Below, one piece after another: positions 3,328 through 39,309 of a stretch of DNA of 64,000 nt. This DNA is from Lytechinus pictus (lineage: Eukaryota): NCBI RefSeq assembly GCF_037042905.1, contig NC_087254.1, positions 20,398,001 to 20,462,000 of the forward strand, written 5' to 3'. Within the stretch, counting starts at the first letter, position 1, and every line of letters starts with the position of its first letter. The notes below the pieces were generated by a model. The model did no database searches. It was not told the DNA's origin and was given only the letters and a program-made list of their open reading frames with translations. Both the position numbers and the translations under genes were made by a program.

Positions 3328-3480
3328 CTGGAAAGACAAGACCTCTGTGTCATTAAATTGATAAGGTTAAGTAATACAATTGCTTTCCATGTATCAAAGA
3401 CACTGTCCAAAATTCCCCCTTGATATTGCAGTCAACTTGCAGATCCATTTTTATATGCCATGTCCAGATGTCATACATAA

Positions 3481-3798
3481 TATGGCGCGCCGTTTGACCA
3501 ATAATTCAGATAAACACTTTTTATCGCCGATAAACAGTGTTTATCGCCGAAAAACAGTGTTTATCGAGCGATAAACACTGTTTATCAAGCGATAAACACT
3601 GTTAATCGAGAGAAACTGTGTTTTTCAGTCGATAAACATAGTTTCTCTCGATAAACACTGTTTTTCGGCGATAAACACTGTTTATCTGATTTATTGGGCA
3701 AATGGCGCGCACTCGTACTCTAGATCCTGCAGTGCCGTACGTATCACCGTATGCACTGTACTAGCTACTCTAGATCTCCACGTGCGTGCGCCGGCACC
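3481..3798 (+). repeat. Left terminal inverted repeat with ~9 palindromic ~20-bp units (CGATAAACASTGTTTATCG)
   Basis: Tandem units at ~3509-3687, flanked by an outer end (3481) and an inverted inner pseudo-end (...TTATTGGGCAAATGGCGCGC, ending 3710). Confidence 0.9.
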
Positions 3799-4822
3799 AC
3801 GTTTTAAATTATTAAAAATACTGCCCTGTTGTTGGGATGGACCTGTTTAACTAGATTCTCTTGATCTTGAGCAGAATTTTAGCCAACTCCAGGTAAGTCC
3901 CAGATCTGATATTCCCATATTTCTGCTACATCTTTCTGGCGCAATTCCGAAAGCCGTCTGGAATCATTAATCAAACGGTCAGTCGGGTACGATTCTGGGT
4001 CTTGACTTGGTCTTGGGTTGGGGCCCCTAATCCCTATATCTATGCCGTGCTATGGCATGGGCTGGCGCGGCCGCGCCCGTCTGCAGGCCTGGTCCCGGGA
4101 GCGCAGGCAGCCCGGTCGGTCGTTCAATTCCGCAAGCGAGACGCGATCGCGACTGCTAGCTAGCTACAGTAGCTAGTTAGATATAACCGTCTGGTATGAT
4201 ATGGGTCATTCTTTAATAAAATTGACATTTGCTACCCTGGCCCGAGGGGGGAGGGGGGGGGGGTATGGGGGATCCGGATGGTACCGATCTTGTAAGTTGT
4301 ACTTGTAGTTGTACCACATAGACTCTATATCATTACATGGCCACACATGCGCACACGTCATAACAATTGAGTGAATGCATGGCACACTCAGTGAGTTTAA
4401 AAGTCACTCTCATTTGTTGCATGTGTACTACTTTGTGCACTAATTGAAACTATAAGTAGGCCTAGGCCTACACATGAGTGACTCTTGCGTTTTGTTTGCT
4501 TAATCAATGAATGAGCTGTTATCTATGCAAAAGGGAATAGTCTAGAACTAGAATAGAAGCCCAGAAACTTGCTTTTGCCCAACTTTGGCCAGTTTGGGAC
4601 GATTACGTGGTGTTATGAAAGGAGAATGAAACTCTTGGAGCAAGTTAGCTTTTGTGAAAGCAGAAAAATCAAAGAATAAGATCAACAAAAGTTTGAGTAA
4701 AATAGGACTAGCAATAGAAGAGTTATGAGCATTTGAATGTCGAGATCACTAATGCTATGGAGATCCTCTCATTGGCAACGCAACCAAGATCTATGATATC
4801 ACAGACGAACAACTCTCCCCTT

Positions 4823-5953
4823 CAGGGGCGTAGACAACGGGGGGGATGAGGGGGATGCATCCCCCCCACCTCACAAGGTGGGGGGGATGGCATGTACAAT
4901 CATCCCCCCCAGGTTTTGGGAATGATATTTGGTTACTTAATAAGTCATAATGATAATAATAGTAATAATAATAATGATAACAATTATAATATTAATAATA
5001 ATAATAATTATGATGATGATAATAATAATCCTCATCATTATTGTAATTGTGTTTATTGTTATTAGCCGCATTCACACGTTGAAAGCCAATTCAGACGGTA
5101 AAAAAAAGAAAATCTTACAAGTATATTTTGTGGTTATCTTGTGGTTTGGAAACCACAAGATAACCACAAGATTAATCGCGCATATTTTGCAGTGCGCGCA
5201 ATCTCGTGGTGTGGAAACCAAAAGATAACCACGAGTTATTACTCCATGGATCATAGTGATACTGTTTATGTTTTTTGTATCTGTATGTTAATGAGCCGCC
5301 AGCCAATATCCATCTATGGATATTATGCCTGTTTCTTTGAGGTAAAAAAAAAGCATAGTATGTACGTATTCATTATGCTTTATAATGAACAGACATATTG
5401 TTATTTGTTTGTTGTTTATGTGTTCTATTCACAAATGGCCACAGAGGCTGTTTTCATTCATAACCACATACCCATATCAAGACAACAAAGACTATACCTG
5501 CGTGTACACAGTTGACATTGGTTTTTTTTCTGAAGAGGTGTAACAGCAAAATTCACAGAGATAAATAAATACGTAGTGTGGTTCAATATGCAATACTATG
5601 TGTCAGTCCATTCTGTATTCGTATGCCACGGTGTGTAGATCTTGTCGATGTATGTCTGTCCATTCAAGGCGTAGTATGTGTGTGGTGCGCGCACCCGTGT
5701 GTGTGTGTGTGTGTGTGTGTGAGTATGTGTGCATGCGCGCTTGTGTGTGTTATTTTACCTTTAAGTATGCATCAGATTGCACGATTTCAAGTTCAAAATT
5801 GCAAAAGCTCCCTACCGTGGGAGGGGGGACACCCCCCTCCCACACCCTCCCCCCGCTCGGTCGCTTCGCTCCCTCGCTCGGGCGCTTCGCGCCCTCACTA
5901 GCGTTGGCAGCCCAGTCATCCCCCCCAGGTGTACGAACCTGTCTACGCCACTG
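4823..5953. mobile_element. Non-autonomous hAT-type element
   Basis: TIR CAGGGGCGTAGACA / TGTCTACGCCACTG (13/14). Perfect 8-bp TSD CTCCCCTT at 4815-4822 and 5954-5961. Internal (ATA)n and (GT)n microsatellites. Confidence 0.85.
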
Positions 5954-6307
5954 CTCCCCTTTTGGACACTGAAAATATACCCCAAAACATCTCTTTTTAC
6001 TCATTCTAATCATATGACAAACGATTCATCAATGATATAATGTTGTGAAACCTCTGTACTTGTCCTCTCATAAAGAGAACACCTCACCTTGTGATAGATT
6101 CTATAAAAGTGAGAATATAAGTGAAATAAGTACTAAAGCAATGAGGGAGTTGTACGTGTGTGACATCACAGATCTTGGTCGCATTGCCAATGGGAGGATC
6201 TACATGGCATGATCTCAATATTCAAATGCTCATAACTTTCTTATTATTCATTCAATCTTCCTCAAACTTTCAACAATATGTTTCTTTGATTTTTCTCTTT
6301 GATATGG

Positions 6308-7922
6308 TGTCACTACAGCAGTGTGTAGTGATGTTATATTCTCTCATCCAATCTTCATCAAGAGTCTGATTATCAAGACTATACCACCAAAGAGGTATAT
6401 GTTTCCCCAGAAGGTGTGACTCACCGCTAATAGTAGAGTAATTTCATTGTTCTCCAACTTCTCTCCAAGAATATCTTCTTGGAAGTAAAGATAACTTTCA
6501 TTCTCATAGTCAGAGTGATGGAGTAAAGTACTACTCACAATCAGTTGCAGAAAGTTCAAGTAAATTGTTATTTGTGGACAACTACAAAGGCCCAATTCGG
6601 TAAGAACATATTTCATATAATATTGTTTTGATATTTAACATGGTAAATATATTGTAGAATTCATATTACTATTTAAGATAGTTTTGAATGTTTTTAGTTA
6701 GAGAAGATTATGTGTTTGTGTTAACAGAGTGTAATACGTATATTGCATAGTGTAGGAAAGTTGATTTCTTTGTTGTACAGTTTAGTATATTTGAGGAATA
6801 GGTGAATATACTGATGTTGATAGATCTCATAATATTGTTCTTGTATAATACATTTCCATCTAGAAGTGCTAAGATGTAAAAGGCTTTTAAATACAATGAA
6901 TTAGTTGGGTGTAATTATACATAAAGCAAGAAGTCTAGTTTCATTGGGAAACAAAGAGAGTCTGTTTTTGCTAATCCAGTAGAAGCAGGGTCTATGAATG
7001 ACTACTTTGGAATGTGGCCCCTTTCACATTCACCCCTTTTTACTTTCTCTTTTGAGTAGATAAATTACTGCACGTTGTAAATGCAGGGCTTGTTCACATT
7101 TGTATTTTAATCTGGTTTAACTTTAATCTTAAGATAGAATAATGTTATGCTGTTTCGTTATAAGCTGAGTTAGTGTAATAGTAGGAACTATTACTAGTTT
7201 GTTTTCTTATTATACTCTAATCATCTCTAAAGAGTTACTTCTTTAGTTTCATGTTTAACTTGTGATAATGTAGATTACTGTTCGTACATGGCCAATTTGT
7301 TATTAAGAACAAAACCATAACTTTCGTGGAGAGAAAGACCTTTCCTCTGGGAGTGATTTAGGGAGAAACCTTGAATGAATGACTGTGTTGGCATGTAGTT
7401 ATGTTCACCCGGCCAATATCTATTGGGTAGAATACTTAGTAGTGCACAGCACAAAGTGAGTGTAGATGTGTTCATACGAGGATTTAATCAATAGATTAAC
7501 TTTATTCCTTGTATATTTTATACTCTATTAAATTAGGTTAATGTTATAAGGTATAATAGTACAAGTGTATGATGATCACTTATATTAGTGTCAGATTAAT
7601 TCTCATTTAATCATATGTAATCGTAATTGTTGTACTAACTTAGATTTAGTAATTGACATGATTTCAAGATGAAACATTTGTTTATTATTGTTTGTTTATT
7701 CATTATCATTACAGATTGTTATCTGAAGGTGCATAGAAGTATAACTGAAAGTACGACTGAAGTTTGTCACCAGTGTTGGAGATTAACTGAATAAAGCGAA
7801 AGTTTGTTTTATTTCAACAAGTCGAGTCCAGCATTGATTGATTCCTTGTGCCTTGTGAATAACAATAGTTGGACATAAGTAGACGAAACTCCTTCGTAGA
7901 AAGTTTTACGAAGGCAGTCACA
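6308..7922 (+). repeat. 5' LTR (1615 bp)
   Basis: TGTCACTACAGC...GGCAGTCACA. Three ORF-track peptides recur identically at offset 7684. AATAAA at 7790-7795. Confidence 0.97.
6600..7714 (+). other. Predicted intron inside the LTR (copy in 3' LTR at 14284-15398)
   Basis: Donor TCG|GTAAGA at 6600, AT-rich interior, TACTAAC at 7633-7639, T-rich tract and acceptor TTACAG| at 7714. Confidence 0.6.
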
Positions 7923-7934
7923 ATAACAATCGAA
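7923..7934 (+). promoter_or_regulatory. Non-tRNA primer-binding position ATAACAATCGAA, complementary to the predicted LTR splice junction
   Basis: Immediately follows the LTR-terminal CA and lacks the TGG of tRNA PBSs. Its reverse complement TTCGATTGTTAT equals 6596-6599 joined to 7715-7722. Confidence 0.6.
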
Positions 7935-8031
7935 CGGACAACTTGTGTCGTCCAGTCAGGATCACGTTCAGAAAGTTCTGGAATCATCCAAACATACTAC
8001 TTGGAACTTTACTGCCCAAAAGTTTTTCATC

Positions 8032-11000
8032 ATGGCCAACATAGATGGAAAAAATCTAGTCAGCGAGGCTACACGTGTAGATCTTCAGAGGACGTCCTCT
8101 TCGCTGCCAGAAATGATGGATAAGTATCCAAAACCAGCTAGGAGTCTAGCAAGCAGAAAATCAGCCAAAAGCGAGATGCTTATTAAGGCCTTTCAGGCTG
8201 AACTTGATGTTATGGACAAAGAGGACAACATAAAGATTCTGCAAAGGGAGCATGAACAAGCAATGCAGTTGGAGAGAGCCCAGATGGAGCTGAAACGGTT
8301 GAAGCTGCAGAAAGAACATCAGCAGAAATTAGCCGAACTTGCAGAATCAGAAGATGAGCTCTCAAACACCAGTATCAAGTTTCCAGAGGAGACGAAGGAG
8401 GAGTCTGTTCAAAGATTCTTTGAATCTCAATCGACGGATGAGGGCAAGATCCAGACCCAAGCCCCACCAGTTCCAGCCACTCTGAGTGAAGTGAAGCATG
8501 AACCAACCAACGCTTCACCAGGAATGGAAAACGTGGTTGAGTCACTTGCCAAGGTAGCCAACATGATGCTGAATCAAAATGCGACTAGTCAACAAGTATT
8601 GGCAGCCAGTCAGTTACCAAAGGTGGATGTTCCGGTATTTAATGGTGACCCATTACGATATCCCCTCTGGAGAAATGCATTTTCAAGTTTCGTTGACTCC
8701 AAGCCTCTAGATGCCGCAACCAAGCTTCATATGTTGCATACATATGTTACTGGTGAACCAAAGAAGGTCGTGGAGCATTATCTTCTTCTTGGCACCGATG
8801 AAGCTTACCTGAAAGCTAGGGAGTCTCTCGCCAATAGGTATGGCAACACCAGTGTAGTTTCATCAGCGTTCATGAAGAAGTTGAACTCATGGCCGAGAAT
8901 CTCAGACCGGGATCCAAGTGGATTGCGGTCATTTGCGGACTTTCTTCAGCAGGTCAGCGTTGCCAAGGAGACTGTTGACTCCCTTGGCATTCTCGATTAT
9001 CCGCAGGAGAACGTCAAGCTGTTGAGGAAGGTTCCATTCTACCTTGAACGCAAATGGAGAGACGAGGTGACCAAGTGGCAGCGATGTGGATATGGCAGTT
9101 ACCCTACCTTTGCCAGATTTGTAGACTTCGTCACCAGTGCAGCAGAAGTGGCCAATATTCCAGAGTTGGAATACACCAGGTTAGACGAGGCGAAAGTAAA
9201 GTCAGCACCTCCGAAAGGGAAGACCTTTCAAGGTCGGTCACTGTCTACAACAGCCGCACATGGAAAGGAGTATTCATCATGTCCTTACTGTGATAAGGAC
9301 CATCACATCGATGACTGCCCAGAGTTCAAGCAGATCTACTACAAGGATAAGAAGACGTTCTTCTTCAAGAAGTATCTGTGTATGGGATGTGGCCAAAGTA
9401 GCAACCACTTTGGGAAGGACTGCAAGCAACGCCGGGAATGTAAAAAGTGTAAGGGAACCCACTTGACATGCCTACACCGACAGAAGATAGAAAAATCATC
9501 GGCTAGCTCAAACTGTACCAACATCTGCGATCTTCCTGACCAAGATGGAAAGGACCATTGTATGATTGTGCCGGTTTGGGTGAGGCAAGCTGATGATCCA
9601 TCGAGGGAATTCCTAGAATATGCGATCCTCGACGACCAGTCCAATGTTGGATTTGTCTCCAGTGGTCTTTGCGACAGAATGGGTGTTAAAGGACCTGAGA
9701 CTGATCTTTTGCTTACAACAATGCACGAGAGTGCTCAGATTAGCTGTCAAAAGATTAGTGGTCTTGAGGTCTTGGACTTCCAAAAGTCTACAGTTGTCCA
9801 ACTCCCGTCCTGCTACACCAGACAAGAGGTTCCGGCCAAGCGGTCACAAATTCCCAAGGCAGAAGTTCTGAGGAAATGGAGGCATCTAGCACCAATCGCA
9901 GATGAGTTGATGCCATACAACCCGTCAATTAAGGTTTCCTTGCTCATAGGAAACAACTGTCCTAGAGCGATTCGACCCCGAGAAGTACTCGCTGGTGCAG
10001 AAGACGACCCGTATGCGATGAAAACTTCACTCGGATGGGGCGTTGTCGGCAGAGTATGTCAGAGTTCTCAAAGTGATGATGCCGTCTGCCACAGGATTCA
10101 GACAAGTGAAGGATATCCCCACTTGGTGCACTCAAGCCAAGCGAAGGAAGTGTTTGCACCAGAGTCTGTACTGAAGATCTTGGAACGAGACTTCCAAATG
10201 ACAAGTCCAAAAGGAGCTCCACTCTCAGTGAAAGAAACAAGGTTCATGACAATCTTGGAGGATGGAATCCGCAAGAGAAGTGATGGACACTACCAAATGC
10301 CCTTGCCCTTGAAGTCAGATCAGGTGACCTTTCCTGACAACAAGATTCTTGCTGTTAAAAGATGGAGACAGCTATCTGCAAGATTTAGGAAGAACCAGAA
10401 GTTTCTGGATGACTACAAGACCTTCATGGATGATGTAATCACCAACTACGCAGAACGAGTACCAGATGACTGCTTGAAGGTTCGAGATGGCAGAGTAAAC
10501 TATATTCCGCACACAGGGGTGTACCATCCTCACAAGCCTGACAAAATCCGTGTTGTATTCGACTGTTCAGCAAAATTTGAAGGCGTATCCTTGAATGATC
10601 ATCTTCTGCAAGGTCCTGACCTGATGAATGGACTACTTGGTGTTCTGTGCCGATTCCGAAAGGAAGAAGTTGCCTTCATGGCTGATGTGAAAGGAATGTT
10701 CCTTCAGTTCTACGTAGATGAAGAAGACCGGAACTTGCTGCGGTTCCTGTGGTATGAAGGCGGTGACGAAACAAAGGAAGCTGTTGAATACCGGATGAAG
10801 GTTCATCTCTTCGGAGCAGCTAGTTCTCCAGGATGCAGTAACTTTGGACTGAGAAGGGCTGCAACAGATGGTGAAGAAGAGTTTGGTTCAAGTGCAGCAG
10901 AGTTCATTCGTAGAGACTTCTACGTAGATGACGGTCTTAGTTCACGACCTACTGCGGAAGAGGCTGTGCAGCTGCTGAAAAACAGTCAAGCAATCTGTGC

Positions 11001-13641
11001 AAAATCAGGACTGAAATTGCACAAGATTGTGTCTAACAGCAGAGAAGTTCTGAAAAGCTTTCCAGCAGATGAACGAGCAAAAAGCCTGCAAGACCTGGAT
11101 TTAGATGTCGACAAGCTTGTGCTGGAAAGAGTTCTAGGAGTGTCCTGGAACATTGAGAATGACACCTTCAACTTTAGAGTGCAGGTGAAGGCAAGCTCAT
11201 TCTCCAGACGAGGTGTTCTCTCAACGATCAGTTCAATCTATGATCCAAGCGGCTTTCTTGGTCCAGTAGTTCTTAAAGGCAAGAGGATTCTCCAAGCTAT
11301 GTGCAAGCAGAACATGGACTGGGACGAATCTATGACCGATGAACAGCGTTCAGAATGGGATAAATGGCTGCTTGATCTCCAGCATCTAGGTGACCTCCAA
11401 CTCAAGAGATGCTACAAACCAAGTAGGTTCGGCAAGGTCAAGCAGGTAGAAGTCCACCATTTCTCTGATGCCAGTCAGGATGGGTATGGGCAATGTTCAT
11501 ATCTCCGTCTCATCAATGAGGATGACAAAGTGCATTGTTCATTCGTAATCGGAAAGGCCCGAGTTACTCCATTGAGACCAATTACTATTCCAAGACTGGA
11601 GCTAACAGCAGCAACATTGTCAGCCAAGAGCAGCACATTCCTGAAGTCGGAACTGGAATACGATTCTGTGAAGGAGTTCTTCTGGACAGACAGCAAGGTT
11701 GTTCTTGGATACATAAAAAATGAAGCCAGGCGGTTTCATATCTTCGTTGCCAACAGAGTTCAGACAATCCGAGAGCAGACTGACCCTGATGCATGGTACT
11801 ATGTTGATACCAAGGAGAATCCTGCTGATGGAGCTTCTCGAGGAATCTCAGCAAAGGAGCTCACTTCTAGCCACTGCTGGTTTCAAGGCCCAGATTTCCT
11901 GTGGAATGATGGTTTGTTTGCACCCCCAGGAGATGATCCATGTACGGTAGATGACCACGACCCAGAGGTGAAGCATGCCTCAGTCCTGAGAACAGAAGCA
12001 ACCACCAAGGTCAGTACAGGGCAATTTGAATCCAACCGTTTGAATTGCTTCTCCAGTTGGCACTTTGCCAAGAAGGCAGTAGCCAGATGTATACAGCTGA
12101 AGACGAGTCTGAAGAAAAGGGCTAACCAGCATACCAGAACGAGGTCTAGATCAGTGGAAGCAACGATCCCTAAGGTTGTGACAGTGAGTGAGCTGCAGGA
12201 AGCTGAGAAGGTCATCATTAGAGGTTTACAACAAGAAAACTTCACGCAGGAGCTGCAGATTCTTAAAGAACTAGATAAGACAGGAGAAATGAGTAGACAT
12301 GAAGTACCTACTCGAAATGCGGCACTGAAGAAAACCAGTGCCCTCTTCAGATTGGACCCGTTTCTAGATGATGACGGGGTGATTCGAGTCGGCGGCCGGA
12401 TACATCGCGCCAATTTGTCCAGTAACATTAGACATCCAGTGATTATTCCTCGTAAGAGTCATGTCACAACACTGCTGATCCGAGATGCTCATCACAGGAC
12501 CCAACATAGTGGTAGAGGCATTACTCATAATGAGCTACGTCAGAGAGGATACTGGGTGATAGGAGGAGTGTCTGCAGTTTCACAATGCATCTCGTCCTGT
12601 GTGACATGTCGACGATTGCGAGGACAGCCCCTCCAACAAAAGATGGCAGATCTTCCAGAAGAAAGAGTTGAGCCTTCTCCACCATTCTCGTATTGTGCAG
12701 TGGACTATTTTGGACCCTTTCTTATCAAGGAAAGACGGAGTGAAGTCAAGAGATATGGTGTGCTCTTCACATGTCTGTCTTCAAGAAGTGTACACCTGGA
12801 AACTGCCAACAGTCTTAGTAGCAGTGCATTCATCAACGCTTTGCGGCGTTTCATGAATCGACGGGGTGCTGTAAGGCATCTACGCTCTGACCAGGGTACA
12901 GCATTCATTGGAGCCAGAAACGAGTTGAAGGAAGCGCTGTCTGAAATGGACCAGGGAAAGGTACAAGAGTACCTGCTTGAGAATGGATGTGACTGGATAC
13001 CATTCAAGATGAATGTGCCCCATGCCTCTCATATGGGTGGAGTTTGGGAGAGGCAGATTCAGTCAGTGCGACGTGCACTAGAGCCATTGCTGAAATCATC
13101 TGGGAGTCAACTTGATGATGAGGCCTTCAGAACCTTCATGACCGAAGCAGAAGCCATAATCAACTCCAGGCCATTGACGACAACCAATCTAAGTGACAGT
13201 GAAGCACCAGAACCACTGACCCCTCATCATATCTTGACTGCCAAGCCCAAAGTCATATTACCCCCACCAGGAGTCTTCCAGCGCGAAGATGTGTACTCTA
13301 GGAAGTGGTGGAGACGCGTCCAACACCTCGCCAATGAGTTCTGGCTACGATGGAGGAAAGAATATTTGCAGGGACTGCAAGAGCGTAGAAAATGGACAAG
13401 TACAGAAAAAGACTTAACGATAGGTGATATTGTAATCTCCAAAGAAGAGGAGGGAGGACGATACAAGTGGCCCTTAGCTAGGGTGATAGATGTATATCCT
13501 AGTGCCGATGGTAGAATTAGGAAGGTAAAACTTCTAATGGCTGATGGACAGTTAGATAAGAATGGCAAACGCCAGAGCCCACCAACTAAATTCGACAGAC
13601 CAGTAAACAAGTTAGTTCTTCTGTTACCCAATCAACAGTAA
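8032..13641 (+). CDS. BEL/Pao Gag-Pol polyprotein (1869 aa from first ATG; frame open from 7945): Gag (DUF1759-like, three Cys/His knuckles), aspartic protease, RT, RNase H, integrase
   Basis: LPKVDVPVFNGDPLRYPLW; CPYCDKDHHIDDC, CMGCGQSSNHFGKDC, CKKCKGTHLTCLH; protease AILDDQS; RT KIRVVFDCS...FYVDDGL; RNase H HHFSDAS...WTDS...NPAD; integrase H...H...CVTC, DYFGP, SDQG, WERQI. Domain order PR-RT-RH-IN. Confidence 0.97.
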   Translation: MANIDGKNLVSEATRVDLQRTSSSLPEMMDKYPKPARSLASRKSAKSEMLIKAFQAELDVMDKEDNIKILQREHEQAMQLERAQMELKRLKLQKEHQQKLAELAESEDELSNTSIKFPEETKEESVQRFFESQSTDEGKIQTQAPPVPATLSEVKHEPTNASPGMENVVESLAKVANMMLNQNATSQQVLAASQLPKVDVPVFNGDPLRYPLWRNAFSSFVDSKPLDAATKLHMLHTYVTGEPKKVVEHYLLLGTDEAYLKARESLANRYGNTSVVSSAFMKKLNSWPRISDRDPSGLRSFADFLQQVSVAKETVDSLGILDYPQENVKLLRKVPFYLERKWRDEVTKWQRCGYGSYPTFARFVDFVTSAAEVANIPELEYTRLDEAKVKSAPPKGKTFQGRSLSTTAAHGKEYSSCPYCDKDHHIDDCPEFKQIYYKDKKTFFFKKYLCMGCGQSSNHFGKDCKQRRECKKCKGTHLTCLHRQKIEKSSASSNCTNICDLPDQDGKDHCMIVPVWVRQADDPSREFLEYAILDDQSNVGFVSSGLCDRMGVKGPETDLLLTTMHESAQISCQKISGLEVLDFQKSTVVQLPSCYTRQEVPAKRSQIPKAEVLRKWRHLAPIADELMPYNPSIKVSLLIGNNCPRAIRPREVLAGAEDDPYAMKTSLGWGVVGRVCQSSQSDDAVCHRIQTSEGYPHLVHSSQAKEVFAPESVLKILERDFQMTSPKGAPLSVKETRFMTILEDGIRKRSDGHYQMPLPLKSDQVTFPDNKILAVKRWRQLSARFRKNQKFLDDYKTFMDDVITNYAERVPDDCLKVRDGRVNYIPHTGVYHPHKPDKIRVVFDCSAKFEGVSLNDHLLQGPDLMNGLLGVLCRFRKEEVAFMADVKGMFLQFYVDEEDRNLLRFLWYEGGDETKEAVEYRMKVHLFGAASSPGCSNFGLRRAATDGEEEFGSSAAEFIRRDFYVDDGLSSRPTAEEAVQLLKNSQAICAKSGLKLHKIVSNSREVLKSFPADERAKSLQDLDLDVDKLVLERVLGVSWNIENDTFNFRVQVKASSFSRRGVLSTISSIYDPSGFLGPVVLKGKRILQAMCKQNMDWDESMTDEQRSEWDKWLLDLQHLGDLQLKRCYKPSRFGKVKQVEVHHFSDASQDGYGQCSYLRLINEDDKVHCSFVIGKARVTPLRPITIPRLELTAATLSAKSSTFLKSELEYDSVKEFFWTDSKVVLGYIKNEARRFHIFVANRVQTIREQTDPDAWYYVDTKENPADGASRGISAKELTSSHCWFQGPDFLWNDGLFAPPGDDPCTVDDHDPEVKHASVLRTEATTKVSTGQFESNRLNCFSSWHFAKKAVARCIQLKTSLKKRANQHTRTRSRSVEATIPKVVTVSELQEAEKVIIRGLQQENFTQELQILKELDKTGEMSRHEVPTRNAALKKTSALFRLDPFLDDDGVIRVGGRIHRANLSSNIRHPVIIPRKSHVTTLLIRDAHHRTQHSGRGITHNELRQRGYWVIGGVSAVSQCISSCVTCRRLRGQPLQQKMADLPEERVEPSPPFSYCAVDYFGPFLIKERRSEVKRYGVLFTCLSSRSVHLETANSLSSSAFINALRRFMNRRGAVRHLRSDQGTAFIGARNELKEALSEMDQGKVQEYLLENGCDWIPFKMNVPHASHMGGVWERQIQSVRRALEPLLKSSGSQLDDEAFRTFMTEAEAIINSRPLTTTNLSDSEAPEPLTPHHILTAKPKVILPPPGVFQREDVYSRKWWRRVQHLANEFWLRWRKEYLQGLQERRKWTSTEKDLTIGDIVISKEEEGGRYKWPLARVIDVYPSADGRIRKVKLLMADGQLDKNGKRQSPPTKFDRPVNKLVLLLPNQQ

Positions 13642-13991
13642 TTATTCCCACTCAAAATCCACAGTAGTAAAGTGGAAGTATCCCATTTGTCTCGCGAAAG
13701 ACTCGGAGCTTTCCCCCTCAAAGAGCCATTATCTTTTACATTTTCATTTAACGATGATATAAATGATGCGTTTAAATTGTTGTTTTTCTTTTCATGTATG
13801 GTTCAGTGATAATTCTAAAGGCTAGAATGCTGTTTTAAAGGTTGCATTGTGTGTATGTATCCATTGGGTATAGTATTGGTCAAAGTATTGTTTAAGATTA
13901 ATTTGTATTATGATGTGGTATAATTTGTTGTACTTTATATTCGTAATAATTGAAGCTAATTTAGTAAATGTAGGTACATTTAAAGGAGCCA

Positions 13992-16599: not shown

Positions 16600-16960
16600 C
16601 AGGGGCGGATCAAGCCGGCGGCAAGGGAGGGGGCCTAAAAAGGGGCCCACTTCGTGCGAAAATTTTGAAAATCGTGCCAGTGGGGGGGGGTGTGAGCCAA
16701 AAAAAAAGGGTAATTTTTTTTCCACCGCCACCCCCCCCCCCCTTGAGCGCCAGGGGTAGTGAGCACATTTTTTTTTTTTTGGCACCCGAAAAAGAATTTT
16801 CCCTACGGGAAGGGTTTTTTTTTTTCCACCGCCACCCCCCCCCCCCTTGGGCGCCAGGGGAGGGGGCCCAACTTCTCTTTTTTTTCAAAAAAAGGGTGTT
16901 TTTACCTGTTTTTTTTCTAGGGGAGGGGGCCCGGGCCCCCCCCCCCTGGATCCGCCACTG
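16600..16960. mobile_element. Non-autonomous hAT-type MITE
   Basis: CAGGGGCGGATC / GATCCGCCACTG termini; 8-bp TSD GGACATGT / GTACATGT (7/8). Confidence 0.75.
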
Positions 16961-17207
16961 GTACATGTAAATAATTTCAAACTAGTGTTGCCTAGGCCTA
17001 GGTACGTATATAGTGATAGATCTAGACCCTATGTGATAAAGTATATGAGACTGAGTAGAAAACATAGGCTTTGATAATTTAGTTTTTTCCCTAGAGTAGG
17101 CCTACAGTTTTTTAATTGTTGTGGCTTACGCCTATACAGGTAATACTAATAGGTCTACCATACGTACATTTTCCTAACTTTGTTTCAATTTTTCTTTGTA
17201 TCTCAGA

Positions 17208-17261
17208 ATGGTGGAACCACTACCGATGGGGGCATTTGACCCACTAGAAGATTCAGATGAT
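17208..17261 (+). CDS. Cargo gene of the large TIR element, coding exon 1 (MVEPLPMGAFDPLEDSDD)
   Basis: Pyrimidine tract and CAG acceptor at 17206, ATG at 17208, donor GTAAGT at 17262, phase 0. Confidence 0.6.
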
Positions 17262-17340
17262 GTAAGTTAACTTCAGACTTCTGAGTTACTTAATCTTTTA
17301 TTCAAAGAAGAAATACAAAGGCTTTCTTGTGAATAAGCCA

Positions 17341-18174
17341 CACTGTAAAAAAAAATTAGTAGAAATTACTTAATAAAATTGTGGCAAAAAATTGCCTTAA
17401 TTTTTTCAAGTATTTATGACTTTGGCAGTTTTAAGTAAAATTTACTTATTTTCTTTGCTTCCATTTTACTCAAGAAAATTAAGTTACAATAACTTAATTC
17501 AATTAAGTAAAACAATCAACAAAATATTTGAAAATATCAAATGGGGGAGTGGACTTTCGTGATTCGAAAGTCCGCTCCCCCATCGTCCCACTTTTGGTGG
17601 CATCATTTTCATTTTAGACATGTTTTATCCAAATATTAGACTTTGTGAATTGTCACTTACCTGTACATGTATAGGTACTGACATTTATATTTATACGCGA
17701 TCGTTTCATTCTTACAAATAAAACAGTGAGAATAATTTTCTGCTAAATGACTATTTAATATTGCCTTTTCATTGATTCAACAAAAGAATACAATAGTTAG
17801 CACACCCTTATCCAAAACAATTTCAAACACAAATAGATATGACAGTTATTTAAAAAAAAAAAACATTTACTTGCTCTAATGAATATTCATGCATTATTTA
17901 AATATGGCGTTAATTGAAAAATATAAGTACATTCAACATGATTTTATAAGTAACAATCATCTTTGCCTAATTGAGTTAGATTTACTCAATCAAAGCAAGC
18001 TATCAATACGTGAATTTTCTTAAATGTATATTGAACCCAAATAAATCAAGTAAATCAAGTAAATTAAAAGACAAGTTGAAACTACTTAAAAACAACGAAA
18101 AATAATTACAAATTGTAAATTCTACTTAAATACATTAAGTGTTAACTACTGATTCAAAGATTTTTTTTACAGTG
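17341..18174. mobile_element. CAC...GTG (CMC/EnSpm-type) non-autonomous element
   Basis: CACTGTAAAAAAAA / TTTTTTTTACAGTG termini; 2-bp TSD CA. Confidence 0.75.
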
Positions 18175-19088
18175 CACCAGCTCTCACCTTGAGTTTGTAA
18201 CAACCCATGCGATTTGCCATTTGTTTTTGCATATTTTGATAATTTACCCTTGAGTTGACTAAAGAAGCAGAAAACAGTTGTTGATGATCTCTCTATTTAA
18301 TAATAATTTAACAAAACAATACATGCACAATTTTGTGTGAAGAAATGGTTGAAACTATAGCAATGCATTTTTAGCCCCCTCTTGTGTTTTAACGGCTCGT
18401 TTTGATTTGATAACAGGCTTTTTCGTAGTTGTTTGTAATTTGTTATACCAGGCTTTCGAGCATGGTGGAGTACTATCTATTACATGTATATAGTGTGTAA
18501 TGTTATTGTTCAGGATTTGGTTGCTAAAGTTCAGTCTTGCACAAAAAAAACTATCCCTTTAACTCTTAAAGCCCAAGTTCACTCCAAAAATAACTTACTT
18601 TCAATACAACCAGAAAAATCTGACAAACCAATCAAAAAAAGTTTGAGCAAAATCGGATAACTAATAAGAAAGTTATGAATTTTTAATGACATGAAAAACT
18701 TTGAAAATCACTACACAAATTGGCAACTCACTCATGTATCTGTGACGTATCCTCACTATCCACTAATTATTTCCTTTTGATAACTTTAGTAATGTTTGAC
18801 GGATTTTGAGGAATTTGATATGAAGGTACATACTACATAATAAAATTTTTAAAAGCCTAAGTTCTACTTCGGAGTATGTAAGTCAAATGTTATAGCTCAT
18901 TATTTTTGCCAAATTACCTAATGTATGCGAAAATTTGGTTAACTTCCTTGCCTAGTTATCTAATAGTATAGTCTAATGGAGGTAACTTGTTCTGACGTAC
19001 ATAGGCCATTTGTACCCGGTGAGGGGATGCTACGCTTTGCGTTGACTTGTTTAGAGATTGTCACATTACTTCTGTTTTATTCTCCCAG

Positions 19089-19350
19089 GACAATGACTTC
19101 CAAATCCAGAGGCAGCTGCTGAATCGGAGGTTGACAACGGCGATTGGAGGGCTGACTGCTCTGCAGCAGATAAATGTCAACGGGCCCAACGCTAACAGCA
19201 ATCAAGGGAGAGGCCGTAAGAGGAAAAGGGGCCCACCGGCGAAAAGGGTCTCACACATCTGGTATTGCCTGGCAGAAGGAGCTACAGTGCCAAACCTGAA
19301 AAAGAAAGAATCATGCCCTATACATCAGGCGCAGACAGAGGCAGGCTATG
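19089..19350 (+). CDS. Cargo gene coding exon 2 (basic NLS-like RGRKRKR; HIWYCLA...VP...EAGYG motif)
   Basis: Acceptor ttctcccAG at 19088, phase 0; donor TATG|GTAAGT at 19351, phase 1; in frame with ORF 19047..19364. Confidence 0.75.
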
Positions 19351-20641
19351 GTAAGTACAGGTGATTCACTTGATGCAGGACAAACAGTGAAAGTTTAGTA
19401 GTTATGCACAATTCTAGAAACCAAATCAATAACTTCATATTGGAGGGGGAAGGGAATATAAGCATAGATCCTTCTAGTGTTTATAAATGTAAAAACAAAT
19501 ATTTCTTTGAATGCAATCTTATTCCGGAATAGCTCTATCCCTTTAACAGTTTTTTCATTTAATTATTAAAAAAATGAAATTCCTTAATGATGTTTTGTTT
19601 TTAAAGATTCAAATAAGAAATAAATATACAATTAATTACATTAACAGAATATATATTTAAATAAAGATTGTTTACACATTGTAGGTTTCTTTGAATATCC
19701 TCTACATAAATTCCCACTCTCTTGCAATATGAGTATGAATGTTGTCCTGTAATATTTTCGTTTCTGGAATTCTAAACCCTTTATGTTGTATAGCACCCTC
19801 TCAGGACTGATATTACTTTAGCTTTAAAACAGTGTTTCTTGACAATAATTGACCGATTTGCTATTCCCGTTTGGAAATTATATATCGGAACTGCATATTC
19901 TGAGATTTTCATGGTCGCAGCTACCATGGAATGGCCTTAGGCGCTATTTGAAATATCTGAAATTTACCGGGAGCACCGGTTAAATAATTTTTATTATTCG
20001 ATTTGCTCGAAAGCAGAAGTGATTAGGGGCTAAATTTTTTAGTGCTTCTAATACATCCACAGGGGCATCCAAATATATAAAAAATTTAAAGAATAACTAT
20101 CCATCCAATTTCAAAATTTCTCAAAACTTTGCATTACCTAAGGGTGCAAGTCAAAGTTTTTGTTAAAGCATGTTTTGAAGCCCATAGCTTCCAAATGAAA
20201 TAACATTAGGCTCAAATATTCTTGGAGACCTTCCTTTCCTCAACAAATCTTTAAAAAATGAGCGCAATCGTAGAAATCGTCTTATGTAAAGCCCTCAAAG
20301 TTGGAATTTTTTATAAATGCAACAGATTCATGGTCAAAGGGTACCCTTCATCCCACTTGGGAGCAACACCAATTTGTGTGTATTGCTAGACTTTTACCTG
20401 TATTTCCATGGGTTACCCTAGAGTCAGATTCTGCTACTGAAAAGTTTAATGGCGTATTTACACTGCTGAAAATGGCTGCTGAAAAAGCACAATGTCAAAA
20501 TGGAATTCGGCTGAAAGCTCTGACCCATATTTGACACAAAATAGTGGGATATTCAACAATTTAAGTATTTCTTTCAATAACCCAAACCCCTTGATTGGCT
20601 TCAATTTGTTGCTAATCTTTTATGTTGCATTCTCATTTCAG

Positions 20642-21168
20642 GATACCCACCATCTTGTGTTTCCCAAGAAGGCATAAGCATGGTACAATTGGAATTAGAA
20701 CTGGACGAGGTGCAGTTTAAGGAGGACATATGGGAATTATTTCCCATATTAAGAAGAAGTCCATTCAACATCTACAAAAGAGACAAGCAGAAGAAGCTTG
20801 TTCTCATAAATGTAAAGACCCCCAAGGAACTAAAAAATGAAAGATATCGAAGCACTATCTTCATTCGCCCATCATCAGCTTTTCATTCAGCCTTAGCTCC
20901 TGCCTCAACCTCAGCTACCACTGCAGCTTTAGCTCCTGCCTCAACTTCAGCTACCACTGCAGCTTTAGCTCCTGCCTCAACTTCAGCTACCACTTCAGCT
21001 TTAGCTCGTGCCTCAACTTCAGCTTCCACTGCAGCTTTAGCTCCTGCATCAACCTCAGCGACCACTTCAGCTTTAGCTCCTGCCTCAACTTCAGCTACCA
21101 CTTCTTCAGCTACCACCTCAGTGCCTACCACCTCAGTGCCTACAACTCCCTTTGTAAGCTATGCATAA
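20642..21168 (+). CDS. Cargo gene coding exon 3 (...FKEDIWELFPIL...TIFIRP followed by an Ala/Ser/Thr/Pro repeat); ends at stop 21168 or at donor 21154
   Basis: Acceptor ctcatttcAG at 20641. Phase 1 joins exon 2 in frame with ORF 20680..21168. Confidence 0.75.
20887..21102 (+). repeat. Coding 36-bp minisatellite, ~6 copies (xALAPASTSATT)
   Basis: Unit gctttagctcctgcctcaacttcagctaccact(g/t)ca repeated in frame. Confidence 0.9.
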
Positions 21169-22210
21169 TTCGAGAATTGTATGCTTCGAACTGCAAAATT
21201 TTGTTTTTCTATTGCTGCGATCAACTTAGCACACTCAGTGTCCATATTGGTACAGAGTTAACATAAGGTGTAATGGGGAACTAATGACACAACCAAACAT
21301 GCAATTGTGAATCCCGTGGCAAAGTGTATATTAAAAGTCTTCATTTTATGGAAAAATACTCCCAGAAAGATAAGAAAATTGACACGAAACAGTTAAGAAA
21401 CATAACGACTTTTAAATCATGGCCATTATTTGAAGAAAAGATGAAGATTTACTTGATTTTTAGGTCTGTTTTAGTAGGGTATCTCTATGCCGGAGTTACG
21501 GGGTCATAGTCACTCCAGCAAAGCATAGAGAGTCAATACTGCGTATGGACCTCTACTCTAGCGCCGTACCATGTGCTAATACTAATAACACACAAATGCA
21601 CACAACCATGCCAATAAAACTGTAAGCAAGTTTGACAGTGGACTCACGATTTTAATTTTTAAATTATTCTTTTTAACATCGGTGAGTTGACAAAATTGTA
21701 AGTAGATCTAGGTCTACGATCTACCGATTTTGCGTGAAATCAATTTAGTTTTGTACAGTGGTGTTTGAAATGTTGAGATCAATAAAACAGGTTTTAATAC
21801 ATGTACACAGCCAGGATAGCGGTGCAGCTATGTGTGCTAATAATACTACTACTAGTAGTAGTAGGTCTACTAGTAGTTGTAGTAGTAGTAGTAGAGTCAG
21901 TACTAGACAGAAATAACCGTCTGGTATGGGTCATTCTTTAATAAAACTGACATTTGTTGACATTCCCCATACACAGACAGTACCCCGTACGCCTCGCACC
22001 ACGGGGAGAGATTGAGCCGATTGTGACCCACTTTCTACCCCGAAACTTTTCTTAATTAGATCTAATTTTCTGATTTATAAATCAGATATAAAAAAATATG
22101 TATTTTTGTTTTCCTATGTACAGTTCTCAAAGTTTTATTACCTAGATCTATTTCCAAATGCGAAATTTACGGACTTACGTATAGGAGTTATCCATTTTTT
22201 ATCTCAGAAC

Positions 22211-22873
22211 TAGCCAGGCGGCTTCTAGAGAGTAAAAATCATTTACTAACGTAAGGTCACTCTCATGAAGCCAGGGCTTCCTTCATATACTTTTGTGTGT
22301 ACCACCAAAAAACCTGAAACTTTCGCCCCCGAGATTTCTACTTTCTTTCTAAAAGATCTAGCCCTAAATCATGTACATGGGATAAAACTTCATTTCCGAC
22401 ATTTCTACGCTCTCGTTGTTATTTTTTAACAAGAATTCATCAAAAAAATGAGAGAAATATTGTGTAAAGACGGAAGAGACTTGCCCGATGTTTACGCCGC
22501 CATCTTGTTTCCTATTGTTCTTCGCCAACGTTACAGACGCGTGCGTCGGGTAACGTTGGGGAAGAACAATTGAAAACAAGATGGCGGCGTAAACATCGGG
22601 CAAGTCTCTTCCGTCTTTACACAATATTTCTCTCATTTTTTTGATGAATTCTTTTTCAAAAATAACAACGAGAGCGTAGAAATGTCGGAAATGAAGTTTT
22701 ATCCCATGTACATGATTTAGGGCTAGATCTTTTAGAAAGAAAGTAGAAATCTCGGGGGCGAAAGTTTCAGGTTTTTTGGTGGTACACACAAAAGTATATG
22801 AAGGAAGCCCTGGCTTCATGAGAGTGACCTTACGTTAGTAAATGATTTTTACTCTCTAGAAGCCGCCTGGCTA
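22211..22873. mobile_element. Foldback (near-perfect 663-bp palindrome) MITE, hAT-type
   Basis: TAGCCAGGCGG... / ...CCGCCTGGCTA; arms almost perfectly complementary up to the centre near 22541; 8-bp TSD CTCAGAAC at 22203-22210 and 22874-22881. Confidence 0.92.
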
Positions 22874-24139
22874 CTCAGAACCAAGGAAACGGTACGTTCA
22901 TGCATTCGAACTGGTAATCTATGACATGACCCGGCCGATATATTTCCGGGTCAACCGACCAAAACAAGCCCAATGGCCAATCAGAGCACGTGTTGATATT
23001 GGGCTTATGAATATTCAAACTTCACCGGCTCATGCCGGGCTGACTCATACGTAGCTATTGGACGTTCGAAAAGAAAAAATGAATATTCATCTACTCAAAC
23101 CAAGATGGCTGACAACAAATCATGTTGACTACAAGTTCAACGAGTACAAGACTTTCTCGGATTAATCATTAATTTAGGATCTAAATGAGCAAGCTATCGT
23201 AAGTCAAAGTGGATGTTTCCGTGTTATTTTTAATTTTTATTAATATGCAGTGTAATATTGCAGCCAAAATGGATATATGAAGACGTAAAGAGTGAAAAAC
23301 TCGTTGCATATCTCATTCATCGCGGTCCGGCTCAACCGAACCATTCGTTCCCCACACTACTCCATAGCCGTACTTCAGTCTATGTATAGAGGCGGTCAGA
23401 GGAGCCAGATGCAATCTCAGCGGAACAACCGTCGATATCAGAGACTGCATGAAGCTTTCGGTCTAAGTCAGTACTAGGTCTAGTAGTACTAGTAGGCCTA
23501 GTACTACTACTACTGGTAGACTCTAGTACTAGTCTGTACTCTGTAGTCAGTAGGCATACGCGATCAGACAACCCGTCCCTACTAGTACTAAAAGTAATAG
23601 TAGAATCTAGTATTAATAGTACTAATAATTAGTAGTCTACTAGCGATTCAAGGGTAATTCATTAGAAATGACGTGCGTACGTATTAAAACACTTAAAATA
23701 AGATAGGGGGTGTATGAGAGACAAGAGCAAGTATAGTAATAGAATAAGAATAACCCCTTTAACGTTCACGAGTTGATGCGTTGGCAAATTTAGAAACTGG
23801 TCACGAATACTAACGGACGGGACTACATTAAATGGCACGTTGGCGACCAACGGATTACACCAGGCATGACTGGCAATGGCAGTTACTAGACTCTACTACT
23901 AGTACTAGATCTACGTTTTGGTGGGGAATTCTGGTAAAAGCCAATTATTGTATTTACCTGCAGTACACGGTGAAGAAAAGCTTGGTTCCAAGCTGAAACT
24001 TTTCCTGATATGATATTGATAATAATAAGCGGCGGAAATGTCGATCGTGGTCATGTCTCATGAGCAGTGAGGTGTAGATTATGCTGCATGCGCGCTGGCA
24101 TGCAATGCATGGTATATATACGGTGTAAAGTGCCGATAC

Positions 24140-24639
24140 GGTGCCGGCACGCACATGCGGAGTAGTAGTGCATACGGTGATACGGCACTGCACTGATCTG
24201 GAGTACGAGTGCGCGCCATTTGCCCAATAAATCAGATAAACATTGTTTATCGGCGATAAACAGTGTTTATCGCCGAAAAACACTGTTAATCGTCGAAAAA
24301 CACTGTTTATCGCCGATAAACAGTGTTTATCGCCGAAAAACACTGTTTATCGAGCGATAAACACTGTTTATCAACTGAAAAACACAGTTTCTCTTGATAA
24401 ACAGTGTTTATCGCCGATAAACACTGTTTATCGAGAGAAACTATGTTTATCGACTGAAAAACACAGTTTCTCTCGATAAACAGTGTTTATCGGCGATAAA
24501 TCGTGTTTATCAAGCGATAAACACTGTTTATCGAGAGAAACTATGTTTTTCGACTGATAAACACAGTTTCTCTCGATAAACAGTGTTTATCGGCGATAAA
24601 CAGTGTTTATCTGAATTATTGGTCAAACGGCGCGCCATA
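24140..24639 (-). repeat. Right terminal inverted repeat with ~19 palindromic ~20-bp units
   Basis: Units at ~24235-24611; inner pseudo-end GCGCGCCATTTGCCCAATAAATCAG from 24211; outer end ...CAAACGGCGCGCCATA at 24639. Confidence 0.9.
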
Positions 24640-39282: not shown

Positions 39283-39309
39283 GTGAGTGCACAGTCATTT
39301 TAAAAACCA

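What the first reader, a model, noticed from the sequence alone, without database searches (positions are those of the whole stretch)
3481..24639. 21-kb gene-carrying DNA transposon with IS3EU-like ends and no transposase
Seen: exact 36-bp terminal inversion, TIR similarity over ~320/500 bp, TAT...ATA termini, and a 6-mer GATGTC on both sides (directly on the right, offset by 8 nt on the left). About 8 kb remains after removing the clear nested insertions. Recalled knowledge, to verify: the IS3EU superfamily has TAY..RTA ends and 6-bp TSDs. An alternative reading is GG termini with an AT duplication (ISL2EU-like). Inference: an internally deleted derivative that still carries its accessory gene.
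Basis: partly seen in the sequence, partly recalled or inferred. Interest (0 to 1): 0.75.

Follow-up and report, generated by a model that had tools for sequence, protein, structure and literature searches.

The report
Gene-carrying IS3EU-type transposon without transposase
This is a real 21-kb copy of a jumping-gene family of the little-studied IS3EU/GingerRoot kind that has lost its own transposase, has been swollen by four later insertions, and holds a small spliced gene whose first coding exon comes from the transposon; it is a well-documented new example of a known kind, not a new kind.

Summary
Window 3481-24639 is bounded by a 38-nt exact inverted terminus (TATGGCGCGCC...), and the inverted similarity runs about 325 bp on the left and 525 bp on the right.

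The same terminus occurs 82 times in this genome, against 0 for the control pattern. Of 30 paired copies with TAT..ATA ends, 24 have a perfect 6-bp target duplication directly abutting the ends and 3 more have one mismatch.

Published IS3EU/GingerRoot hallmarks are all met:
- a 6-bp duplication;
- TA..TA ends, and TAYGG..CCRTA ends in fungal families;
- GC-rich targets.

A sister copy on contig C8 keeps the last exon of an integrase-core (Pfam rva_4) transposase. The window copy has no transposase codons; its similarity to that copy stops 24 nt before that exon.

After removing four nested insertions, 8.6 kb belongs to the element.

The cargo gene is real: three exons, a spliced contig across both junctions, and a RefSeq model (uncharacterized LOC129270318, Lytechinus pictus). 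Exon 1 is family sequence. Exons 2-3 occur only in this copy, so "accessory gene of the family" is unproven.

In this copy the left duplication sits 8 nt from the end. That offset is unexplained.

The scan had already noted IS3EU-like foldback elements elsewhere in this genome.

The parts
3467..3472 (.). Left copy of the putative 6-bp target duplication GATGTC. It is separated from the element by 8 nt of filler (ATACATAA, 3473-3480).
   Evidence: family TSD table
3481..3710 (+). Left terminal block: TATGG terminus, 33-nt terminal motif, about 9 copies of the 20-bp palindromic unit, and an inward-facing variant of the terminal motif (3686-3710). Inverted homology with the right end continues to about 3805.
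3711..4616 (+). Left internal family sequence, first part. It is 95% identical to copies L033 (C8) and L034 (C13) and includes a GC-rich stretch.
4617..15645 (.). Nested TIR element 'X' (ends GAAAGGAGAATGAAAC / GTTTCATTCTCCTTT). It in turn holds a BEL/Pao LTR retrotransposon at 6308-15606, with 1615-bp LTRs that are 100% identical, a 5-bp TSD TATGG, and a 1898-aa ORF at 7945-13641.
15646..17341 (+). Left internal family sequence, second part, 94-98% identical to L033 and L034.
17208..17261 (+). Cargo gene, first coding exon (MVEPLPMGAFDPLEDSDD, phase 0). It is preceded by a 3' splice-site-like tract and lies in family sequence. The identical peptide is encoded in L033 at 4081-4134.
17342..18174 (.). 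Nested MITE (CACTGTAAAAAA...TTTTTTACAGTG), absent from L033.
18175..18444 (+). Last stretch collinear with L033 (99.6%). This is intron sequence that, in L033, ends 24 nt further on at the acceptor of the last transposase exon. Similarity breaks at 18444/18445.
18445..22035 (+). Segment specific to this copy. It holds cargo exons 2 and 3 between fragments of other repeats (about 18568-19052 and 19773-20475).
19089..19350 (+). Cargo gene exon 2: basic stretch RKRKRGPPAKR (nuclear-localisation-like, my reading) and a Cys-containing motif. Paralogue at C4:23228910-23229155 has 47-50% identity and the same exon borders.
20642..21168 (+). Cargo gene exon 3: a 70-aa ubiquitin-like (beta-grasp) domain, then 12-aa Ala/Ser/Thr-rich repeats (36-bp DNA repeat at 20886-21104), with the stop codon at 21166-21168.
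22036..24210 (+). Right internal family sequence, 94-98% identical to copy L047 (C10:13.0 Mb). It is interrupted by the hairpin MITE listed next.
22211..22873 (.). Nested hairpin MITE: 324-nt arms 98% complementary, TIR TAGCCAGGCGGC, 8-bp TSD CTCAGAAC (hAT-like).
24211..24639 (-). Right terminal block: inward-facing motif variant, about 19 copies of the 20-bp palindromic unit, 33-nt terminal motif, CCATA terminus.
24640..24645 (.). Right copy of the 6-bp target duplication GATGTC, directly abutting the end.

Best explanation
Window 3481-24639 is one non-autonomous copy of an IS3EU/GingerRoot-type cut-and-paste DNA transposon family of this sea-urchin genome.

Identity of the genome. The RefSeq protein encoded here is from Lytechinus pictus, on a contig whose length equals that of C10.

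How the family moves (inferred from the family and from the literature). An integrase-like DDE transposase (Pfam rva_4) supplied in trans would bind the TATGG termini and the arrays of 20-bp palindromic subterminal units. It would integrate with a 6-bp staggered cut, preferring GC-rich NNCGNN targets.

State of this copy (shown):
- Both long ends are intact.
- All transposase codons are lost. Collinearity with the C8 copy stops 24 nt before the last transposase exon.
- 12.5 kb has been gained through four nested insertions.

The gene it carries (shown). The gene is spliced and annotated. It encodes about 280 aa (summed from the three exons): an acidic N-terminus, a basic RKRKR stretch, a ubiquitin-like domain and a repeat tail. 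Its first coding exon is transposon-family sequence. Its other two exons lie in a 3.6-kb segment unique to this copy.

Origin of that segment (unresolved). It could be a remnant of a longer ancestral element or DNA acquired during gap repair.
For: Family and ends:
- The terminus pattern occurs 40 times forward and 42 times reverse, against 0 for the control. Almost all hits pair up.
- Of 30 pairs with TAT/ATA ends, 24 have perfect 6-bp TSDs and 3 have one mismatch. These TSDs are 67% GC against 37% for the window, with C at position 3 in 19/24 and G at position 4 in 17/24.
- The ends match published IS3EU features: TA..TA termini with a 6-bp TSD (PMC10045372), TAYGG..CCRTA ends with TIRs over 30 bp (PMC12730594), and GC-rich TSDs with carried gene fragments in GingerRoot (PMC6839031).

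Transposase:
- Sister copy L033 encodes rva_4 at E 1.9e-62.
- Paralogue L070 has an upstream exon with a weak HTH_21 match and the first catalytic D.
- Full-length homologues are 413-429 aa, with D-57-D-35/37-E spacing and no HHCC motif.

Collinearity and nested insertions.

Gene:
- GT..AG joints 17261>19089 and 19350>20642 occur in a contig of run X4.
- The public proteins XP_054763689.1 and .2 match the three-exon model.
- A paralogue has the same exon borders.
Against: - The left GATGTC is 8 nt from the end, whereas 27 of 30 other copies have abutting TSDs. One-event insertion is therefore likely but not proven.
- No autonomous copy of this exact family is in the assembly. The only transposase matches are L033 (truncated) and a 67% paralogue without recognised ends.
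- Placement of rva_4 transposases among reference IS3EU/GingerRoot proteins was not tested, because no reference sequences were on hand.
- No empty site could be examined.
- The deep RNA runs X19 and X20 show no reads on the exons. Run X4 is only guessed to be RNA.
Confidence: 0.85

Rival explanations
1. Capture (Pack-type). The 3.6-kb segment with exons 2-3 was host DNA copied into a deleted element during gap repair. The transposon's own first coding exon then happened to splice in frame to it, creating a chimeric gene.
For: - Exons 2-3 are in no other family copy.
- They belong to a small gene family with members outside recognisable elements on C4 and C2.
- In L033, exon 1 sits directly upstream of the transposase's last exon, which suggests it was originally a transposase-gene exon.
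- GingerRoot elements often carry acquired gene fragments (PMC6839031).
Against: - No parental copy of high identity exists in the assembly. The best matches are 47-50% for exon 2 and 35-36% for exon 3 at protein level, although family copies are 94-99% alike.
- The acidic run continues smoothly across the exon 1/2 junction (EDSDD|DNDF), and the C4 paralogue's exon 2 starts DDDFQ.
Confidence: 0.35
2. Native accessory gene. The ancestral autonomous element carried both the transposase and this gene, possibly sharing the first coding exon by alternative splicing. This copy and L033 are different deletion derivatives of it.
For: - It requires only deletions.
- Exon 1 is shared by the L033 and window copies.
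- Fungal IS3EU elements carry several genes (PMC10853768, PMC12730594).
- The only paralogue of exons 2-3 with full exon structure lies 48 kb from the closest paralogue of the family's transposase.
Against: - No copy with both genes was found.
- None of the other rva_4 loci examined has exon 2/3-like sequence within 1.5 kb.
- The C4 pair is convergent and 48 kb apart.
Confidence: 0.35
3. Two unrelated truncated insertions bracket a resident host gene: a left-end fragment at 3481-18444 and a right-end fragment at 22036-24639. On this reading there is no single 21-kb element.
For: - Most family members are short units with their own TSDs.
- The middle segment is unique.
- The left TSD is not abutting.
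Against: - The same hexamer GATGTC flanks both outer ends (chance about 0.8%, my estimate).
- The two fragments have the order and orientation of one element.
- The inner ends of both blocks lack TAT/ATA and lack their own duplications. Instead they continue into about 95 nt of mutual inverted homology and into interior sequence collinear with other long copies.
Confidence: 0.1
4. ISL2EU-like element with GG..CC termini and a 2-bp AT duplication.
For: AT precedes GGCGCGCC on the left and follows it on the right.
Against: 30 pairs have invariant TAT/ATA, and 24 of them are followed by perfect 6-bp direct repeats of varied sequence. A 2-bp duplication does not predict this.
Confidence: 0.01

Closest known systems
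IS3EU superfamily (Repbase), including the fungal families ending TAYGG..CCRTA and the multi-gene element Styx of Zymoseptoria
   Same: 6-bp target duplication, TA..TA termini (here exactly TATGG..CCATA), TIRs longer than 30 bp, an integrase-like DDE transposase without an HHCC zinc motif, non-autonomous derivatives mobilised in trans, and extra genes inside some elements (PMC10045372, PMC12730594, PMC10853768).
   Different: - The host is an animal (sea urchin).
- The ends are long blocks built from arrays of a 20-bp palindrome with an inward-facing second copy of the terminal motif.
- Most copies are 0.2-1.4-kb foldback/MITE-like units.
- The carried gene encodes a small protein with a basic stretch and a ubiquitin-like domain, not TET/JBP or alpha-kinase.
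- The clade of the transposase was not tested.
GingerRoot (Selaginella lepidophylla and aquatic animals)
   Same: 6-bp TSD, 5'-TA...TA-3' termini, GC-rich target sites, and frequent loss of the transposase together with carriage of gene fragments (PMC6839031).
   Different: GingerRoot TIRs are 100-150 bp. Acquired fragments there have identifiable, highly similar parental genes, whereas no such parent is found here. Here the insert forms a complete spliced ORF.
Pack-MULE-type gene-carrying non-autonomous transposons
   Same: A non-autonomous TIR element with long ends carries exons of a cellular-type gene, and transposon sequence is joined to them in one transcript.
   Different: The superfamily differs: Mutator elements make 9-bp TSDs. 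Capture is not demonstrated here.
Foldback elements and the IS3EU-like foldbacks already noted in this genome by the scan
   Same: Ends made of short tandem sub-repeats, and many copies that are almost pure inverted repeat.
   Different: This copy has 8.6 kb of non-palindromic interior with a gene.

Membership tests
IS3EU/GingerRoot | 6-bp target site duplication | tested here: met
   Met for the family: 24 perfect and 3 one-mismatch TSDs among 30 TAT/ATA pairs, and no 7-mers. For this copy, GATGTC is present on both sides but the left one is offset by 8 nt.
IS3EU/GingerRoot | Termini 5'-TA...TA-3' (fungal IS3EU: TAYGG..CCRTA) | tested here: met
   TATGG...CCATA in the window and in 30 paired copies. 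Feature as stated in PMC10045372 and PMC12730594.
IS3EU/GingerRoot | Terminal inverted repeats longer than 30 bp | tested here: met
   38 nt exact, 66 nt at 97%, and extended inverted homology of about 325/525 bp.
IS3EU/GingerRoot | Encodes an integrase-related DDD/E transposase without an HHCC motif, with the first D 100-300 residues from the N-terminus | tested here: inconclusive
   The window copy encodes none. Sister copy L033 has the last exon only, rva_4 at E 1.9e-62 with the second D and the E. Full-length homologues have D at 175-227, D-57-D-35/37-E spacing and no HHCC. Paralogue L070's exon 1 has a weak HTH_21 match, below the Pfam cut-off.
IS3EU/GingerRoot | Transposase clusters with reference IS3EU/GingerRoot proteins in a phylogeny | not testable with these tools
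IS3EU/GingerRoot | GC-rich target preference (reported for GingerRoot) | tested here: met
   Perfect TSDs are 67% GC against 37% for the window, with a central CG (C 19/24, G 17/24).
   Invariant TAT/ATA followed by 6-bp direct repeats.
Gene-capturing (Pack-type) element | The internal segment has an identifiable parental host gene of high identity elsewhere in the genome | tested here: not met
   The best matches to exons 2 and 3 elsewhere in the genome are 47-50% and 35-36% at protein level. No DNA-level match was found.

The most novel reading that the evidence does not exclude
The carried gene is a working accessory gene of an animal IS3EU element, not a passenger. It encodes a small protein with a basic, nuclear-localisation-like stretch. 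Its ubiquitin-like domain is the same module that is repeated 3-5 times in front of C2H2 zinc-finger arrays in teleost proteins. It would be expressed from the transposon's own first coding exon, for example as a decoy or modulator of host zinc-finger-based silencing. That would be the first accessory protein described for IS3EU in animals.
Probability: 0.15. Interest if true: 0.6.

Novelty: new member of a known kind. Interest (0 to 1): 0.4.

Why it matters
IS3EU/GingerRoot is one of the least characterised superfamilies of eukaryotic DNA transposons, and animal families are known mostly from repeat-library entries.

This family gives:
- a clean TSD table;
- a target motif (NNCGNN);
- a candidate transposase-binding unit, the 20-bp palindrome arrays;
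- a series running from 0.2-kb foldback units to a 21-kb gene-bearing copy.

It also shows that an annotated "uncharacterized" sea-urchin gene takes its start codon from transposon sequence and sits between transposon ends. This matters for gene annotation and for studying how such elements create or move genes.

None of this changes the known picture of the superfamily.

Tried and rejected
- **Each terminal block as an independent MITE:** rejected. The inner ends lack TAT/ATA and lack their own duplications, and they continue into shared interior sequence.
- **Transposase in the window:** tblastn with both exons of the C4 paralogue found nothing.
- **Upstream HTH/first-D exon in L033:** absent.
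- **Terminal repeats around the C4 transposase paralogue:** none recognised within 10 kb.
- **Paralogous empty site:** both flanks are single-copy, so this gave nothing.
- **Pfam on every stop-to-stop frame of the element's own sequence:** no family.
- **Protein Atlas:** only weak unnamed clusters for exon 3, and nothing for exon 2.
- **Word-based protein search with exon 3:** a single 67-aa hit.
- **Foldseek against PDB:** only E of about 0.16, to PB1 domains.
- **VIA-align:** only Z 3.0-4.2, almost all to ubiquitin-like domains. This is a lead on the fold, not a function.
- **Bacterial promoter scan:** irrelevant for this eukaryote.
- **A first exon for the C4 paralogue:** none found within 1.5 kb upstream.
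Full report
**1. The observation**

The two ends are real.
- Read inward, 3481... and 24639... are identical for 38 nt (TATGGCGCGCCGTTTGACCAATAATTCAGATAAACACT).
- 66 nt are 97% complementary (I7).
- Each end is a block. It holds the terminal motif, an array of the 20-bp palindromic unit GATAAACACTGTTTATCGGC (8.9 copies on the left, 18.9 on the right), and an inward-facing variant of the terminal motif (3686-3710 and 24211-24235).
- About 95 nt of further mutual inverted homology follows. Inverted similarity therefore spans about 325 bp on the left and 525 bp on the right, as reported.
- GATGTC abuts the right end (24640-24645). It also lies at 3467-3472, 8 nt (ATACATAA) before the left end.

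**2. A family with a consistent footprint**

The window is G000:C10:20398001-20462000 in an 812-Mb assembly.
- The 33-nt terminal motif, with up to 3 mismatches, occurs 40 times forward and 42 times reverse, against 0 for the reversed control. The hits pair up almost without exception.
- I fetched 38 loci and tabulated the flanks. Thirty pairs have TAT...ATA ends; 24 have a perfect 6-bp direct repeat directly outside TAT/ATA and 3 more have one mismatch. None extends to a 7-mer.
- The perfect duplications are 67% GC in a window of 37% GC. C is at position 3 in 19/24 and G at position 4 in 17/24, giving an NNCGNN preference.
- Most copies are 0.2-1.4 kb and consist of little more than the terminal blocks.
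- The long copies are L031 (4.8 kb), L032 (6.1 kb, with a nested RT plus tyrosine-recombinase retroelement), L033 (5.1 kb), L047 (about 3.2 kb), the truncated L034, and this one (21,159 bp).

**3. Comparison with what is published**

- Kojima and Bao state that complete IS3EU families always have TA..TA termini and usually 6-bp TSDs, and that IS3EU and GingerRoot form one lineage (PMC10045372).
- Fungal IS3EU families have TIRs over 30 bp and end TAYGG..CCRTA (PMC12730594). That is exactly the TATGG..CCATA seen here.
- GingerRoot has 6-bp TSDs, TA..TA ends, GC-rich TSDs and frequent carried gene fragments, and it occurs in aquatic animals (PMC6839031).
- Styx, an IS3EU relative, carries four coding sequences (PMC10853768).
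- IS3EU appears in the text of two sea-urchin genome papers; I did not open them to see in what context.
The alternative of GG ends with an AT duplication is excluded.

**4. The transposase**

- Copy L033 (C8:1873966-1879111) has an ORF matching Pfam rva_4 (integrase core) at E 1.9e-62.
- It is only the last exon. The acceptor lies at ...TTTTACAG|A TGG GGT, and the C-terminus runs into the right terminal array.
- The closest paralogue (C4:23280224, 67% identity) has an upstream exon with a weak HTH_21 match, below the Pfam cut-off, and the WHLD first-aspartate motif.
- Neither L033 nor the window has that upstream exon.
- Full-length homologues from molluscs and a sponge are 413-429 aa. They have D-57-D-35/37-E spacing, no HHCC motif, and a first D at residues 175-227. 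This matches the published description of IS3EU-type transposases.
- I could not place the protein in a tree with reference IS3EU proteins.
- No intact transposase of this exact family is in the assembly.

**5. Anatomy of the window copy**

| Window coordinates | Content |
|---|---|
| 3481-3710 | Left terminal block |
| 3711-4616, 15646-17341, 18175-18444 | Collinear with L033 (94-99.6%) and L034 |
| 4617-15645 | Nested TIR element X, holding the BEL/Pao LTR retrotransposon 6308-15606 |
| 17342-18174 | Nested MITE |
| 18445-22035 | Found in no other family copy |
| 22036-22210, 22874-24210 | Collinear with L047 (94-98%) |
| 22211-22873 | Hairpin MITE with an 8-bp TSD |
| 24211-24639 | Right terminal block |

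- The BEL/Pao element has 1615-bp LTRs that are 100% identical and a TATGG TSD. Its ORF matches Peptidase_A17, DUF1759 and DUF5641.
- Removing the nested insertions leaves 8,634 bp.
- Collinearity with L033 breaks 24 nt upstream of the acceptor of the last transposase exon. No transposase codon survives.

**6. The carried gene**

Exon structure:
- Exon 1 is 17208-17261 and ends in phase 0.
- Exon 2 is 19089-19350.
- Exon 3 is 20642-21168.
- All borders are GT..AG and in frame.

Evidence that it is a real gene:
- A 489-nt contig of public run X4 joins 17261>19089 and 19350>20642, at depth 3.8 and with 2 differences. That run is only guessed to be RNA.
- The deep RNA runs X19 and X20 have no reads on the exons. 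The reads they place at 18561-19164 and 19769-20221 are 95-99% matches that run on into unlike sequence, so they come from other repeat copies.
- The profile search returned P0122. Its cluster-mate P0172 is RefSeq XP_054763689.2, uncharacterized LOC129270318 of Lytechinus pictus. It lies on a contig of 37,180,102 bases, the length of C10, and reproduces the three-exon model.

Where the exons come from:
- Exon 1 is family sequence; the same 18 residues are encoded in L033 at 4081-4134.
- Exon 1 cannot splice in frame to L033's transposase exon (phase 0 against phase 2). An intermediate exon is therefore missing from both copies.
- Exons 2 and 3 have one paralogue with identical exon borders at C4:23228910-23232165. 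Identity is 47-50% for exon 2 and 35-36% for exon 3. Two partial exon-2 copies lie on C2.

What the protein looks like:
- No Pfam family matches.
- The exon-3 domain has 51 relatives at E<=0.001. They include teleost proteins with 3-5 tandem copies of the domain ahead of C2H2 zinc-finger arrays.
- An AlphaFold model from a 23-sequence alignment has pLDDT 77.5. Its best matches are almost all ubiquitin-like beta-grasp domains (TBK1 ULD, Ufm1, USP7 UBL, PB1) at Z 3.0-4.2, with PB1 hits at E of about 0.16 by Foldseek. This is a weak but coherent lead on the fold.

**7. Interpretation**

Shown:
- The family's ends and its 6-bp footprint.
- Loss of the transposase in this copy.
- The four nested insertions.
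- The gene, and its transposon-derived first coding exon.

Inferred:
- Trans-mobilisation by an rva_4 DDE transposase that binds the palindromic arrays.
- A single insertion at GATGTC. The 8-nt filler is unexplained. One other copy, L058, also has a displaced duplication.

Unresolved: whether exons 2-3 are native to a longer ancestor or were acquired. I rate the two options about equal.
- Against recent capture: there is no high-identity parent, although family copies are 94-99% alike.
- Against native status: no copy has both genes.
- A curiosity: the only full paralogue of exons 2-3 lies 48 kb from the closest paralogue of the transposase on C4.

**8. Limits**

- The spliced model was searched exon by exon, by reference only.

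**9. Verdict**

This is a new member of a known kind. Interest is moderate, because of the clean family data and the transposon-fused annotated gene.

Noticed in passing
window 6308-15606: BEL/Pao LTR retrotransposon with 1615-bp LTRs that are 100% identical (6308-7922 and 13992-15606), a 5-bp TSD TATGG and an open 1898-aa polyprotein frame. It looks like a very recent insertion.
   Followed up: partly
window 4617-6307 and 15607-15645: About 1.7-kb TIR element 'X' (GAAAGGAGAATGAAAC ends, internal 87-nt inverted arms). Compared with the empty site in L033 (1920-1935), its insertion shows no clear target duplication (0-1 nt). Superfamily unknown.
   Followed up: partly
window 22211-22873: Hairpin MITE with 324-nt arms 98% complementary and a 15-nt loop, TAGCCAGGCGGC termini and an 8-bp TSD CTCAGAAC (hAT-like).
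   Followed up: partly
family copies L031-L064 (TSD table): The family prefers GC-rich targets with a central CG (NNCGNN): C at position 3 in 19/24 and G at position 4 in 17/24 perfect TSDs, in a genome window of 37% GC.
   Followed up: yes
G000:C4:23228910-23232165 and C4:23280224-23282500: The only full paralogue of the cargo gene's exons 2-3 lies 48 kb from the closest paralogue (67%) of the family's transposase, in convergent orientation. This may be chance or a remnant of an old linked pair.
   Followed up: no
L058 (G000:C5:14329251-14330792): This copy has a 10-nt flank match (AATGTACCGT) displaced by 1 nt on the left. It is a second case of a non-abutting duplication in the family.
   Followed up: no
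L055-L063 (for example G000:C18:11298786-11300147): About ten family members hold three exact terminal motifs (F,F,R or F,R,R). They look like composite or dimer-like arrangements of the short units.
   Followed up: no
L032 (G000:C4:25462021-25468166): A short family member carries a nested retroelement with reverse transcriptase and tyrosine-recombinase ORFs (DIRS/Ngaro-like).
   Followed up: partly
window 18561-19164 and 19769-20221: These intron stretches attract many RNA-seq reads at 95-99% identity that run on into unlike sequence. Other copies of these repeat families are therefore highly transcribed.
   Followed up: no
window 38561-39286: 241-aa ORF with a Myb/SANT-like DNA-binding domain (Myb_DNA-bind_5, E 4.8e-9), outside the element.
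   Followed up: no
G000:C4:22365050-22399074: Cluster of more than 15 degenerate rva_4 integrase-core matches with in-frame stops within 35 kb, apparently a tandem array of decayed IS3EU-type transposase copies.
   Followed up: no
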